Shown here piece by piece: positions 37,125 to 59,847 of a DNA stretch of 64,000 nucleotides. The position numbers and the translations under genes were made by a program. The notes below the pieces were generated by a model that saw nothing but the letters and a program-made list of their open reading frames with translations, ran no database searches and was not told where the DNA came from. Each line of letters begins with the position of its first letter. Positions within the stretch are counted from its first letter, which is position 1. Location: IMG/VR virus record IMGVR_UViG_3300019458_000020, positions 124,001 to 188,000 of that record. The stretch is one strand, 5' to 3'.

Positions 37125-38207
37125 TCATTGTTTATAATCTACGTTTAAAATTTTGACCGATAGTTGTCTTCCAAGAACAGAAGAATAACGTGGTTTACAC
37201 GGTCGAAGAACGATTCCCTCTCCGTTATTTTTTCCATACTTAAAATTATTAGCAATTTCCTGTAGTCGTGCTACATTCCAAGTTTCATCTAAAATAAAAC
37301 AGTCTCCAATTTGGTCAACTGTTGGAATATCCAATATTGCACAAGTCAACACAATTTGTCCCCAATCGAGCCATGCGCCATTGTCCAAATCACGAATATT
37401 GAATACACGGAATGATTTTTCCGATATTTCCATTTTGTTTCCCTGAATGGTTGGTCCAACGGCCTCGGCCTGAATTGCAATATTTCGATTGAACTTGGTC
37501 AGTTTCTCAACCAAATTTAACTTATTCACGATTGACCAAAACCCCGTTCCTTCTTTTTGTTCTAGTTTTCGGCTACAAACACGAACCTTTCCATCTTGAT
37601 AAATGATAGTACAAGAACTACCATCGGCCTTGCCTGTGATATAACACAAATCGCCACGAAGTTCATTCAATACTTCATCACCATAATTTAATAGATTGTG
37701 TTCATCCGTCATTGGTATAAGATTTGTTGGAAAATTACCTACTGCTTCAGAACTAATTGGTTCTGGCTTTTCGTATTTGATGATACCAAGAATTTCAGTA
37801 ACGTCGTCGCCCTCCTTTAGATTAGCGATGTTTTTTTCAACTTGAAATACCTCATTACCAATTTCTTTTGAATTTTTAAGAAGAATATCACACGGACATA
37901 CCAATCCCTGAGATGGTGCCCCTTTGAATCTACAATTCCAGATCCGATACTTTTGACGTTCCAAAAAAGAAAAAAATGGATTGGTAGAAGGAACAATGGT
38001 GTCAATAGTAATAAAAACAACCAAATCACCTTCTTTGAATTCGCCTTTCTTGATAACGACCGGCCATTCTTTGATTTTGGCTACCTCTAATCTTTCAACC
38101 TCTTTATTAGGATGTGGTTGAATCAAGTGGATTCTTTGAATTGTTGCTAAATTTTTCATTAGATGTATAAAATTTCGTCGGTTTTTACTAAAAAATATTG
38201 ATAACAA
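37125..38207 (-). CDS. RNA ligase, DRB0094 (Rnl2-like) family; start probably MKNLATIQ
   Basis: LATIQRI...PHP..ERLEVAKI..W.VVIKKGEFKEGDLVVF; motif I ITGKADGSS; AEAVG..IQGN; GEGIVLRP; VKILN. Confidence 0.88.
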   Translation of the reverse strand: MLSIFFSKNRRNFIHLMKNLATIQRIHLIQPHPNKEVERLEVAKIKEWPVVIKKGEFKEGDLVVFITIDTIVPSTNPFFSFLERQKYRIWNCRFKGAPSQGLVCPCDILLKNSKEIGNEVFQVEKNIANLKEGDDVTEILGIIKYEKPEPISSEAVGNFPTNLIPMTDEHNLLNYGDEVLNELRGDLCYITGKADGSSCTIIYQDGKVRVCSRKLEQKEGTGFWSIVNKLNLVEKLTKFNRNIAIQAEAVGPTIQGNKMEISEKSFRVFNIRDLDNGAWLDWGQIVLTCAILDIPTVDQIGDCFILDETWNVARLQEIANNFKYGKNNGEGIVLRPCKPRYSSVLGRQLSVKILNVDYKQ

Positions 38208-38351
38208 GACCCACCATCTCGTCTCACATACGACATGCCGTTACAAAAGTGACAAACGAGTTCTAAAGAATGAGTTTTCCATTTTATTTGTTTCATGGGG
38301 ATTAATATACGAGATTTTTAGAAAAAGTCAAGAAGTTATGAGGAAGAAAAT

Positions 38352-43850: not shown

Positions 43851-43879
43851 ACTATAGTTGGGTTACACGTAAATGTCAA
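43851..43879 (-). promoter_or_regulatory. Sigma70-like promoter TTGACA-17-TATAGT
   Basis: Direct read; just upstream of tRNA-Pro. Confidence 0.75.
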
Positions 43880-47490: not shown

Positions 47491-47519
47491 ATTATAATCT
47501 TGATTCATCCGTTTGTCAA
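47491..47519 (-). promoter_or_regulatory. Consensus sigma70 promoter TTGACA-17-TATAAT
   Basis: Direct read. Confidence 0.85.
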
Positions 47520-58529: not shown

Positions 58530-58606
58530 TGGTACCCCAGGTAGGAATTGCACCCACTATTCTCTACGTTCGAAGCGTAGCATGATTCTATTATCACCAC
58601 TGAGGC
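58530..58606 (-). tRNA. trnR: tRNA-Arg(TCG), T-loop TGCAATT
   Basis: CTACG CTTCGAA CGTAG; CCA. Confidence 0.85.
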
Positions 58607-58703: not shown

Positions 58704-58777
58704 TGGCAAGCGCCGTCAGAATCGAACTGACATCTTTCGTTTTGGAGACGAAGGTAATACCATTATACAAGACGCCT
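58704..58777 (-). tRNA. trnW: tRNA-Trp(CCA)
   Basis: TTCGT CTCCAAA ACGAA; G73; CCA. Confidence 0.92.
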
Positions 58778-59204
58778 AATAATAAAAAAATTTCCGAGAA
58801 GAAATTTCTAAATAATCTTCTCCTATCAACCCCTTCGCTTTTAATAACGAAGTTAATTCCAAAAGGTTCATGTTTACCATTTTTGCTACACGTTTCAAAC
58901 AACGTCTTCTAAGACGTTTTCGATAACGAAAATCTTCTTTTTTAGACTCTTCATTCTTTTCTTTGTCTAATTTTAGATGAATCTTTTTATGACATCCACG
59001 ACAAAGAACAATTAAATCTCTTAATGAGACATCATACAAATTTTTATATCTTTTATGATGAACATCTAAAACATGAATAGAATTACATCTTTGACAACAA
59101 GGATTGTATAGAAATTTTTTCTTCTTTAATTCTTTCCAATGGTCGCTTTTAAGATAATCATTTCTATAATACTCTCGTTTGTCGTTAATTTTCTTCATTG
59201 ACAA
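58776..59204 (-). CDS. HNH endonuclease
   Basis: YLKSDHWKE...CQRC...LDVHHKRY...LIVLCRGCHKKIH. Confidence 0.85.
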   Translation of the reverse strand: MSMKKINDKREYYRNDYLKSDHWKELKKKKFLYNPCCQRCNSIHVLDVHHKRYKNLYDVSLRDLIVLCRGCHKKIHLKLDKEKNEESKKEDFRYRKRLRRRCLKRVAKMVNMNLLELTSLLKAKGLIGEDYLEISSRKFFYY

Positions 59205-59402
59205 TAATATATAACAAAATTCTATTTTGTCAATGAATCAATTACGTTCCTATATCGTGGGAACTCTCACGCTTGACCTATCGTTGGTGATATCAGTTCC
59301 GCGCTCTCGACTGCCTGATACCGGCCCTACAGCTTTTACTGTTCCGCCTCTACGCCTCATTCCATGAGGATTTTTAACTAACTATCTAACAAATCTTTCC
59401 AA

Positions 59403-59436
59403 CAAAAAACCACCGAACTTTTCAGTTTCGGTGGTT
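59403..59436 (-). terminator. Intrinsic terminator of the putative attenuator
   Basis: AACCACCGAA ACTGAAAAG TTCGGTGGTT TTTTG. Confidence 0.8.
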
Positions 59437-59460
59437 GTCAAATCGTAATATTCTTTCTGG

Positions 59461-59601
59461 TTACGTTTGGCAACCTCCGATAGCATAATTTCTTGGTTGA
59501 CGATTATGCCATAGGCAGCCTTTCTCTGCCTTCGAATCAAACGGGAGGCAGCTTCCGGCTGTCAATACCGTCGATTTAATCTGTTCAAATGATAATTTCA
59601 T
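59461..59601 (-). CDS. Putative leader peptide (46 aa)
   Basis: MKLSFEQIKSTVLTAGSCLPFDSKAEKGCLWHNRQPRNYAIGGCQT*, starting ~10 nt after the promoter -10 box and ending 24 nt before the terminator. Confidence 0.55.
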   Translation of the reverse strand: MKLSFEQIKSTVLTAGSCLPFDSKAEKGCLWHNRQPRNYAIGGCQT

Positions 59602-59611
59602 GTTACCTATA

Positions 59612-59639
59612 AGTATATCTCAACTTTTCTTTTTGTCAA
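59612..59639 (-). promoter_or_regulatory. Sigma70-like promoter TTGACA-16-TATACT heading the dense tRNA array
   Basis: Direct read. Confidence 0.7.
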
Positions 59640-59847
59640 ATCTTTTTTAACTTTTTCAGTGATATCCGATTATACGGTCGTCACTATGAATCACATTACC
59701 ATTCTTCTTTTCGATTGGCAAATCTTTTTTGACATTGTTTGTATCATCCACCAAATCAACACGAAACGACTCCTTATTCAACCAACCTGCCAACGTACCA
59801 TCTTCGTAAAATAATGGAATTCTGTCATTCATTGTCTTATATCCATG

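What the first reader, a model, noticed from the sequence alone, without database searches (positions are those of the whole stretch)
59403..59639. Translation-sensing attenuator at the head of the tRNA array
Seen, on the minus strand: a sigma70 promoter (59612-59639), a 46-codon ORF (59601-59461), then an intrinsic terminator (59436-59403). The last codons of the ORF (ATC GGA GGT TGC) contain TCGGAGGTTG (59480-59471), which is 9/10 complementary to the terminator's left arm CAACCACCGA, giving a mutually exclusive antiterminator. Further GC hairpins lie inside the ORF (GGCATAAT/ATTATGCT, GGCAG/CTGCC). Established: this geometry defines ribosome-mediated attenuation. Inference: when ribosomes reach the stop they mask the antiterminator and transcription ends. 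When translation is stalled (e.g. host tRNA cleavage or starvation) the antiterminator forms and the phage tRNA array is transcribed. That would be an on-demand tRNA rescue switch.
Basis: partly seen in the sequence, partly recalled or inferred. Interest (0 to 1): 0.8.

Follow-up and report, generated by a model that had tools for sequence, protein, structure and literature searches.

The report
Terminator/antiterminator switch before phage tRNA array
An uncultured giant phage carries, just upstream of its dense tRNA gene cluster, a strong promoter, a short reading frame and two equally strong, mutually exclusive RNA hairpins (stop or go), the layout of a translation-sensing attenuator. No such control was found described for phage tRNA genes, but it rests on two sequences and no experiment.

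Summary
It shares 9 nt with the terminator hairpin (59436-59408, -16.2 kcal/mol). This is one of only three canonical terminators on that strand in 64 kb, and the other two have no such competitor.

Only one relative carrying the element could be found (L002, a 35-kb Logan contig; neighbouring proteins 48-83 % identical). It keeps the promoter, start, frame, stop position, both hairpins and the following tRNA order. Helix positions differ at 8 % and loops at 31 %. Indels inside the ORF are in frame (33, 3, 3 nt); the first one after the stop is 2 nt. The phage's genes mostly lack Shine-Dalgarno sequences, and several start 6-9 nt after a -10 box, so a leaderless start is plausible.

The attenuator architecture is supported; ribosome control is likely but unproven. 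There is no run of regulatory codons, covariation is minimal (n=2), and predicted AT-to-T refolding barriers are low. In the window, an inserted HNH gene with its own promoter bypasses the switch. The "on-demand tRNA rescue" idea remains inference.

The parts
59612..59639 (-). Sigma-70-type promoter: -35 TTGACA at 59639-59634, 16-nt spacer, -10 TATACT at 59617-59612. An A-rich stretch lies just upstream (59655-59641).
   Evidence: 11/12 match; the stretch from the stop of the upstream gene to the -10 box is nearly identical in L002, where the promoter hexamers and spacing are the same; such sites are enriched on the gene strand.
59461..59601 (-). Leader ORF of 46 codons plus TAA. The ATG lies 10 nt after the -10 box, which predicts a leaderless or near-leaderless message.
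   Evidence: L002 has a 35-codon ORF with the same start, frame and stop. Indels within the ORF are 33, 3 and 3 nt. Only 3 of 23 identical-residue codons differ synonymously, against 125 of 337 in neighbouring genes (p=0.023). There is no family or homologue beyond itself.
59514..59530 (-). Conserved small hairpin inside the ORF: GGCAG, a 7-nt loop, CTGCC.
   Evidence: The stems are identical in L002 and the loop has 1 change.
59482..59510 (-). Conserved hairpin inside the ORF: GGCATAAT / ATTATGCT. Its 5' arm carries the conserved Trp-His-Asn codons.
   Evidence: In L002 the stem is kept (G-U becomes G-C) while the loop is 3 nt shorter and changed.
59428..59480 (-). Antiterminator hairpin of 18 bp. 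The 5' strand is 59480-59461, which is the last 7 codons plus the stop codon UAA (paired at the apex). The loop is 59460-59449 and the 3' strand is 59448-59428. It shares 59436-59428 with the terminator's left arm.
   Evidence: -18.0 kcal/mol, z -5.8, 0/200 shuffles; L002 -20.0, z -5.4; it is the MFE fold of transcripts that end before the terminator's 3' arm, in both phages; 16 of 19 pairs are invariant, one goes C-G to U-G, and one goes from an A.A mismatch to U.G.
59401..59436 (-). Intrinsic terminator: a 10-bp stem (59436-59427 with 59417-59408), a 9-nt loop, and a U-tract (59407-59401).
   Evidence: -16.2 kcal/mol, z -4.4; one compensatory A-U to G-C change in L002. It is one of three canonical terminators on this strand in 64 kb.
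59564..59579 (-). Window-only segment (codons 8-13) that pairs long-range with 59453-59438, the upper 3' strand of the antiterminator. It is a possible anti-antiterminator.
   Evidence: part of the full-length MFE (-65.9 against -58.6 kcal/mol for the antiterminator form); masking it with a modelled ribosome at codons 14-16 shifts the equilibrium to the antiterminator (P up to 0.85). It is not conserved: most of it lies in the 33-nt stretch absent from L002.
59373..59400 (-). Block directly after the terminator that is almost invariant between the two phages. Its role is unknown.
   Evidence: 1 difference in L002, whereas the sequence beyond it is unalignable. It is unique in the window.
59206..59233 (-). 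Second strong promoter (TTGACA-16-TATATT), belonging to the inserted HNH endonuclease gene (ATG 59198, stop at 58776). That gene abuts tRNA-Trp (58777-58704). In this phage the promoter bypasses the switch.
   Evidence: ATG 7 nt after the -10 box; HNH families; tRNA-Trp. L002 has neither the gene nor a promoter of at least 9/12 between the terminator and tRNA-Trp.

Best explanation
This is a transcription attenuator. A strong host-type promoter starts a roughly 200-nt leader RNA. Its 3' half can fold in two ways: as an 18-bp antiterminator hairpin, or as an intrinsic terminator that uses 9 of the same nucleotides.

The antiterminator is transcribed first and is at least as stable as the terminator, so a bare transcript tends to read through into the tRNA cluster. 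The leader also carries a short ORF, probably translated from a leaderless 5' AUG. The last seven codons and stop codon of that ORF are the 5' strand of the antiterminator.

A ribosome that keeps pace with RNA polymerase and reaches the end of the ORF holds that strand single-stranded. The terminator then forms and transcription stops at about 59401. A ribosome that lags or stalls before about codon 36 (in or before the conserved Trp-His-Asn-Arg-Gln block) leaves the antiterminator intact, and transcription continues into tRNA-Trp, Thr, Arg, Lys, Lys, Asn and onward.

Shown: the two competing structures, their stability, their overlap with the ORF, and their conservation. Inferred: translation of the ORF, kinetic control by the ribosome, and any physiological signal.
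For: - Structures and energies. The antiterminator folds at -18.0 (window) and -20.0 (L002) kcal/mol, against -16.2 and -17.7 for the terminator.
- Transcripts truncated before the terminator's 3' arm fold into the antiterminator in both phages.
- The feature is specific: the two control terminators have no competitor.
- L002, full-length RNA: antiterminator form -45.1, terminator form -44.1. Letting the left arm pair upstream gains -11.6 kcal/mol, with 0 of 200 shuffles as good.
- Conservation pattern: helices differ at 6 of 74 positions and loops at 16 of 52, p=0.0016. The terminator has one compensatory change, and antiterminator changes keep or gain pairing.
- ORF: same start, frame and stop in both phages. 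In-frame indels lie inside it and a 2-nt indel lies right after the stop. The other two frames are not conserved.
- Leaderless plausibility: genes here mostly lack Shine-Dalgarno sequences, and ORFs of 76, 140, 288 and 163 aa start 6-9 nt after a -10 box. The 5' 16-30 nt are unpaired in both MFE folds.
- A ribosome modelled at the last 9-10 codons gives P(antiterminator)=0.00 in both phages.
- In L002 no promoter of at least 9/12 separates the terminator from tRNA-Trp.
- Leaderless leader peptides for attenuation have been predicted in Deinococcus deserti (PMC4007540).
Against: - Only two sequences exist, so covariation is negligible, and shared ancestry or recombination could explain much of the identity.
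- There is no run of regulatory codons and no obvious cognate amino acid.
- In the window's full-length RNA the terminator form wins by 7.3 kcal/mol. Letting the left arm pair upstream gains only -1.8 kcal/mol, and 61 of 200 shuffles do as well, because of a competing long-range helix.
- The equilibrium model gives a high terminator probability for most ribosome positions.
- The predicted AT-to-T barrier is only 5-6.6 kcal/mol, so the terminator could displace the antiterminator without a ribosome.
- The ATG is 10 nt (window) or 13 nt (L002) after the -10 box. That is slightly further than in the clear leaderless genes, and the transcription start is unknown.
- In the window the HNH promoter at 59233 feeds the tRNAs anyway.
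- No RNA data could be listed.
Confidence: 0.45

Rival explanations
1. A self-contained small gene, coding for a 46-aa protein, a roughly 200-nt small RNA, or both, with its own promoter and terminator. The terminator also closes the upstream run of genes. The 18-bp hairpin is a structural or stability element of this RNA and does not regulate read-through.
For: - Other short ORFs follow strong promoters in this phage: a 34-aa hydrophobic one and a 45-aa Cys-rich one.
- The unit is GC-rich like the tRNA genes and strongly structured.
- Two Cys residues and a WHNRQ block are conserved.
- A gene caller did call the ORF (P0004).
- The low refolding barrier means the terminator may always win.
- The tRNAs have other promoters (59233 and 43879).
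Against: - It does not explain why the hairpin shares exactly the terminator's left arm, at matched stability, in both phages.
- It does not explain why the stop codon sits at the hairpin's apex.
- The peptide evolves without third-position bias, with few synonymous changes and loose residue conservation. That is unlike the neighbouring genes.
- No protein relatives or recognisable features were found, and no Rfam family matched.
- In L002 the next tRNAs have no promoter of their own.
Confidence: 0.27
2. A real terminator/antiterminator switch, but set by a trans-acting factor rather than by the ribosome. Candidates are an RNA-binding protein, a tRNA or another RNA, or a small ligand. On this view the ORF is incidental or has a separate role.
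For: - The terminator loop and the 28-35 nt after the terminator are nearly invariant, although pairing does not require that. This suggests sequence-specific recognition.
- The conserved hairpins in the 5' half could form a binding domain.
- There is no regulatory codon run.
Against: - No T-box, riboswitch or protein-binding leader family matched, even at E up to 10.
- The antiterminator has no T-box-type bulge.
- The pattern of in-frame indels inside the ORF and an out-of-frame indel outside it is not expected for a purely non-coding sensor.
Confidence: 0.18
3. Chance: an ordinary operon-end terminator that happens to lie next to an unrelated hairpin and an open frame.
For: - Open frames of this length are not rare at this composition (P about 0.05-0.08 per frame).
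- With two related sequences, conservation is weak evidence.
Against: - The hairpin z-scores are -5.8 and -5.4 with 0 of 200 shuffles as good, and the control terminators show nothing similar.
- Helices are conserved far better than loops and better than synonymous sites of neighbouring genes.
Confidence: 0.07

Closest known systems
Leader-peptide transcription attenuators of amino-acid operons (E. coli trpL, and the hisL/pheL/leuL/thrL/ilvL class)
   Same: A promoter-proximal short ORF is followed by an intrinsic terminator, with an antiterminator that competes for the terminator's left arm. A ribosome reaching the end of the ORF removes the antiterminator, and a ribosome stalled earlier allows it. 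The window copy even has an upstream segment that can sequester part of the antiterminator, analogous to region 1.
   Different: - There is no run of codons for one amino acid.
- The ORF is longer, at 46 or 35 codons.
- The start is probably leaderless.
- The possible "region 1" pairs with the 3' rather than the 5' strand of the antiterminator, and it is missing in the relative.
- The genes downstream are tRNA genes of a phage, not biosynthetic enzymes.
Predicted leaderless leader peptides in Deinococcus deserti (PMC4007540)
   Same: Leader peptides whose AUG sits at or next to the transcription start, proposed to act in transcription attenuation.
   Different: [quoted passage not shown] They are bacterial, not viral.
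pyrBI-type attenuation (coupling of ribosome to RNA polymerase)
   Same: A roughly 44-codon leader ORF, with the outcome decided by how closely the ribosome follows the polymerase.
   Different: In pyrBI (from my own knowledge) the ORF runs through the terminator, so a close ribosome prevents termination. Here the ORF stops 24 nt before the terminator, and a close ribosome should favour termination.
T-box riboswitches
   Same: A leader of about 200 nt with terminator/antiterminator competition, linked to tRNA status.
   Different: There is no match to the Rfam T-box model and no specifier loop or bulged antiterminator. T-boxes control synthetase or amino-acid genes, not tRNA genes.
Attenuator-derived small RNA rnTrpL of Sinorhizobium (PMC6614838)
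   Same: The terminated leader is itself a stable, structured RNA that could act in trans and also encodes a peptide.
   Different: There is no evidence here for any trans target.
Phage tRNAs as counter-defence (PMC11464382, PMC11555353)
   Same: These papers give a selective reason for a phage to control a large tRNA set: tRNA-cleaving host defences.
   Different: They describe the tRNAs, not any sensing switch in front of them. Nothing here links the switch to defence.

Membership tests
Ribosome-mediated (leader-peptide) transcription attenuator | Short ORF close to the transcription start of the leader | tested here: met
   The ATG at 59601 is 10 nt after the -10 box. L002 has the same arrangement, at 13 nt.
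Ribosome-mediated (leader-peptide) transcription attenuator | The ORF is actually translated | not testable with these tools
   Support is indirect only. The frame and stop are kept across in-frame indels. A leaderless design is common in this phage. The 5' end is unpaired. No RNA runs were listed.
Ribosome-mediated (leader-peptide) transcription attenuator | Intrinsic terminator between the ORF and the regulated genes | tested here: met
   A 10-bp stem plus U-tract at 59436-59401, -16.2 kcal/mol, z -4.4, with a compensatory change in L002.
Ribosome-mediated (leader-peptide) transcription attenuator | Antiterminator mutually exclusive with the terminator | tested here: met
   An 18-bp hairpin at 59480-59428 that shares 59436-59428 with the terminator: -18.0 kcal/mol, z -5.8. 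L002: -20.0, z -5.4.
Ribosome-mediated (leader-peptide) transcription attenuator | The ORF overlaps the antiterminator so that ribosome position selects the fold | tested here: met
   The last 7 codons plus the stop are the 5' strand. A ribosome modelled at the last 9-10 codons gives P(antiterminator)=0.00.
Ribosome-mediated (leader-peptide) transcription attenuator | Run of regulatory codons cognate to the regulated product | tested here: not met
   No repeated codon was found. There is only a conserved single-copy block, Trp-His-Asn-Arg-Gln, just upstream of the antiterminator.
Ribosome-mediated (leader-peptide) transcription attenuator | Upstream segment or pause hairpin (the 1:2 equivalent) that sets the default state | tested here: inconclusive
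   The window has a long-range helix, 59579-59564 with 59453-59438, but it is absent from L002. The two small hairpins inside the ORF are conserved.
Ribosome-mediated (leader-peptide) transcription attenuator | No independent promoter between the terminator and the regulated genes | tested here: inconclusive
   Not met in the window, where an 11/12 promoter at 59233-59206 belongs to the inserted HNH gene. Met in L002, which has no site of at least 9/12 in the 220 nt before tRNA-Trp.
Ribosome-mediated (leader-peptide) transcription attenuator | Conservation and covariation in relatives | tested here: inconclusive
   There is one relative only. Helices differ at 8 % and loops at 31 %. There is one compensatory pair in the terminator and none in the antiterminator.
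T-box riboswitch or any Rfam cis-regulatory or sRNA family | Match to the family covariance model | tested here: not met
   Nothing above noise was found in 59180-59680 at E up to 10, nor in L002 10730-11360.
Known small-protein family | Sequence or feature similarity of the 46-aa product to any family | tested here: not met
   Pfam and PHROGs gave 0 hits. A profile search of 1.84 billion proteins found only itself. The best Atlas score was 0.64.

The most novel reading that the evidence does not exclude
A phage-encoded sensor of translation that gates transcription of its own tRNA array. When leader translation slows, because host tRNAs are scarce, cleaved by a defence nuclease or poorly matched to phage codons, the antiterminator persists and the array is switched on. 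When translation is fluent, the array's extra transcription is shut off. That would be feedback control of tRNA supply by a virus, using a leaderless leader peptide without a classical codon run.
Probability: 0.2. Interest if true: 0.85.

Novelty: new variant of a known kind. Interest (0 to 1): 0.62.

Why it matters
Large phage tRNA arrays are now seen as tools for codon supply and for surviving tRNA-cleaving host defences (PMC11464382, PMC11555353). How their expression is controlled is little known. Five full-text searches found no described attenuator in front of phage tRNA genes.

If this switch works as its anatomy suggests, it would extend the classical leader-peptide mechanism in three ways: to a virus, to RNA genes as the regulated product, and to a leaderless leader without a codon run. 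It would also give a compact, testable part of about 240 nt that reports on translation status.

If instead it is only a small gene with a terminator, it is ordinary.

Tried and rejected
**Searches for relatives**
- DNA searches of GenBank phages, near and distant: no match.
- Protein-mode searches of GenBank phages with two window proteins: none.
- IMG/VR, by protein, by protein alignments and by DNA pattern: only the source contig itself plus one chance hit.
- JGI metagenome pattern scan: the source contig (340,880 bp) plus three chance hits.
- GTDB genome scan: five chance hits.
- Peptide profile against 1.84 billion proteins: only itself plus repetitive false hits.
- Cluster look-ups: singletons.
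- Search with the upstream 58-aa neighbour protein: only itself.
- A third relative of the upstream genes (L011, 3.3 kb) ends before the element.
- No RNA sequencing run could be listed.

**Alternatives considered and rejected**
- The overlapping 52-aa TTG ORF (59540-59382): its frame is broken in L002.
- T-box or any other Rfam family: no match.
- Sequence paralogues of the element elsewhere in the window: none.
- A repeated motif role for the conserved block after the terminator: it is unique in the window.

**Analyses that proved uninformative**
- The energy-gain test over the whole upstream region was not significant for the window, because a competing long-range helix absorbs the difference. 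The local hairpin test is the informative one.
- Equilibrium ribosome-mask modelling cannot settle a decision that is kinetic.
- I did not build a covariance model. With two nearly identical helices and no further sequence to search, it could add nothing.

Full report
**What the window is.** The window comes from an uncultured giant phage. It matches IMG/VR contig UViG_3300019458_000020 at 100 %. The same sequence sits on a 340,880-bp JGI contig, from cave metagenomes. The window encodes a baseplate wedge protein and an RNA ligase, 33 tRNA genes on the minus strand and several HNH endonucleases. No GenBank phage matches at DNA level or with the proteins I tried.

**The observation.**
- Promoter: TTGACA-16-TATACT at 59639-59612.
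- ORF: 46 codons, 59601-59461.
- Terminator: a 10-bp stem (59436-59427 with 59417-59408), a 9-nt loop and a U-tract.
- The 10-mer at 59480-59471 is complementary to the terminator's left arm.
- Two small hairpins lie inside the ORF.

The tool's terminator scan missed the terminator only because its loop limit is 8 nt. With my own scan (stem at least 6 bp with 4 or more G-C pairs, loop 3-10 nt, at least 6 T in the next 8), there are just three canonical terminators on this strand in 64 kb. Promoter-like sites scoring at least 11/12 number 9 on the gene strand, against 2.4 +/- 1.6 in block shuffles.

The alternative pairing is an 18-bp hairpin, not 10 nt.
- Its 5' strand is 59480-59461, its loop 59460-59449 and its 3' strand 59448-59428.
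- The stop codon UAA is paired at the apex.
- Folded alone it gives -18.0 kcal/mol, z -5.8, with 0 of 200 shuffles as good. The terminator alone gives -16.2, z -4.4.
- The two hairpins share 59436-59428, so they cannot coexist.
- Transcripts cut before the terminator's 3' arm fold into the antiterminator.
- The left arms of the other two terminators stay unpaired in the same test (z +0.4 and +1.4).
- The whole unit has z -5.4. It is as GC-rich as the tRNA genes (0.45-0.53), within coding DNA at 0.25-0.35.

**The one relative.** Many searches (listed under tried and rejected) produced a single second copy. It is L002, a 35-kb Logan contig found through the neighbouring 203-aa protein. Its upstream genes are syntenic and 48-83 % identical at protein level.

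L002 keeps all of the following:
- the promoter, with the same hexamers and spacing;
- an ATG-initiated ORF of 35 codons, in the same frame and with the same stop;
- the two internal hairpins;
- the antiterminator (-20.0 kcal/mol, z -5.4) and the terminator (-17.7);
- the following tRNA order, Trp, Thr, Arg, Lys.

Between the two phages, helix positions differ at 6 of 74 sites and loops or linkers at 16 of 52 (p=0.0016). For scale, 37 % of identical-residue codons in neighbouring genes carry a synonymous change. The terminator has one compensatory A-U to G-C change. In the antiterminator, a C-G pair becomes U-G and the A.A mismatch becomes U.G. With two sequences, formal covariation is essentially nil, and I do not claim it.

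**Is the ORF translated?** There is no direct evidence. The indirect evidence is as follows.
- Start, frame and stop are shared. The other two frames, including the overlapping 52-aa TTG ORF, are not conserved.
- Indels inside the ORF are 33, 3 and 3 nt. The first indel after the stop, in the antiterminator loop, is 2 nt.
- This phage's genes mostly lack Shine-Dalgarno sequences.
- ORFs of 76, 140, 288 and 163 aa begin 6-9 nt after a strong -10 box. The leader ATG is 10 nt (L002: 13 nt) after its -10 box. The 5' end is unpaired in both folds.
- Leaderless leader peptides have been predicted in Deinococcus deserti (PMC4007540).

On the other hand, the peptide does not evolve like a normal protein. 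Differences are spread evenly over codon positions (7, 6, 8). Only 3 of 23 identical-residue codons differ synonymously, against 125 of 337 in neighbouring genes (p=0.023). It has no relatives or family. That pattern fits a leader whose frame and RNA structure matter more than its residues. It equally fits a structured RNA with an incidental frame.

**Mechanism and its weak points.** The geometry gives a clear prediction. A ribosome within the last 9-10 codons covers the antiterminator's 5' strand (modelled P(antiterminator)=0.00) and does not reach the terminator, which begins 24 nt after the stop. Termination should follow. A ribosome that is absent, or held before about codon 36 (window) or codon 25 (L002), leaves the antiterminator free. 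The conserved Trp-His-Asn-Arg-Gln codons lie just before that boundary.

Four cautions apply.
- In the window the full-length RNA prefers the terminator form by 7.3 kcal/mol. A window-specific segment (59579-59564) pairs with the upper 3' strand of the antiterminator. At equilibrium, only a ribosome at codons 14-16 tips the balance. In L002 that segment is missing and the two forms are isoenergetic (-45.1 against -44.1).
- The predicted barrier from antiterminator to terminator is 5-6.6 kcal/mol. The terminator may therefore displace the antiterminator even without a ribosome.
- There is no run of regulatory codons.
- In the window an HNH endonuclease gene, with its own 11/12 promoter (59233-59206), sits between the switch and tRNA-Trp. 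It ends at the first base of that tRNA, so the array is fed independently. L002 has neither the gene nor a good promoter in that gap. L002 is therefore probably the ancestral state, and the one in which the switch would matter.

Two further points on context. Three tRNA genes lie 8-12 kb further upstream in both phages. At least one internal promoter directly precedes a tRNA, at 43879.

**Comparison with known systems.** The element works like a leader-peptide attenuator of the trp/his/phe class. It meets the structural criteria but fails the regulatory-codon criterion. Translation is untested. It is not a T-box or any other Rfam family. Five full-text searches found no described attenuator in front of phage tRNA genes. 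Recent work on phage tRNAs as counter-defence (PMC11464382, PMC11555353) gives a possible rationale, but nothing here links the switch to defence. An RNA ligase in the tRNA region and a peptidyl-tRNA hydrolase gene in L002 are only suggestive.

**Verdict.**
- Observation: confirmed, and stronger than stated.
- Interpretation: partly supported.
- A regulated terminator/antiterminator switch of some kind: about 0.65.
- Ribosome-mediated control, as stated in the best explanation: about 0.45.
- The tRNA-rescue reading: about 0.2.
- Novelty: a new variant of a known kind.

Noticed in passing
window 58533-58606 (-): A tRNA gene that ARAGORN did not report. Rfam scores it at 41 bits, and its anticodon loop reads UCG (tRNA-Arg). 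The dense array therefore starts Trp, Thr, Arg, Lys, Lys, Asn, the same order as in L002.
   Followed up: yes
L010 1695-1770, 4598-4681, 4785-4860 (same contig, 8-12 kb upstream of the element, outside the window); L002 295-371, 3082-3165, 3261-3336: Three further tRNA genes lie upstream of the element in both phages. One has a CUA anticodon (amber-suppressor-like; ARAGORN calls it Pyl), one is Leu-UAG and one is Ala-UGC. The CUA tRNA has its own terminator-promoter pair just upstream (L010 1547-1611).
   Followed up: partly
window 58776-59204 (-) and promoter 59233-59206: An HNH endonuclease gene has been inserted between the switch and tRNA-Trp. It has its own consensus promoter, a leaderless start (ATG 7 nt after the -10 box) and a stop that abuts the tRNA. 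It is absent at this site in L002, which instead carries a PDDEXK_5 gene further into the array.
   Followed up: partly
window 59373-59400 (-): The 28 nt directly after the terminator, and the terminator's 9-nt loop, are almost invariant between the two phages, although pairing does not require that. The block is unique in the window. Possible roles are a processing or binding site, but this is unexplained.
   Followed up: partly
window 59240-59370 (both strands): This is a GC-rich stretch (0.53) between the terminator and the HNH promoter. It has no Rfam hit, an insignificant fold z-score (-1.4 and -1.9), and no alignable counterpart in the equally long L002 spacer. On the plus strand, a hairpin with a T-run at 59355-59369 looks like a terminator.
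   Followed up: partly
whole window, e.g. 61084, 49106, 33254, 59233, 57997: Genes of this phage mostly lack Shine-Dalgarno sequences, and several start 6-9 nt after a TTGACA/TATAAT-type promoter. Leaderless messages therefore seem to be a regular design here, which may be a clue to the unknown host.
   Followed up: partly
window about 47485-47381 (-) and about 38305-38168 (-): Two more short ORFs lie directly behind strong promoters. One is a 34-aa hydrophobic (membrane-like) peptide after a 12/12 promoter at 47519. The other is a 45-aa Cys-rich peptide after the promoter at 38331, next to tRNA-Gln. Neither is followed by a canonical terminator.
   Followed up: no
window 37125-38207 (-); L002 841-1164: An RNA ligase (phrog_968, E 1e-43) lies within the tRNA region. 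The relative L002 carries a peptidyl-tRNA hydrolase (PTH2) gene upstream. Both hint at tRNA repair or rescue functions in this phage group.
   Followed up: no
window 43879-43851 (-): An 11/12 promoter sits immediately in front of tRNA-Pro (43841-43764), so parts of the array have their own promoters.
   Followed up: no
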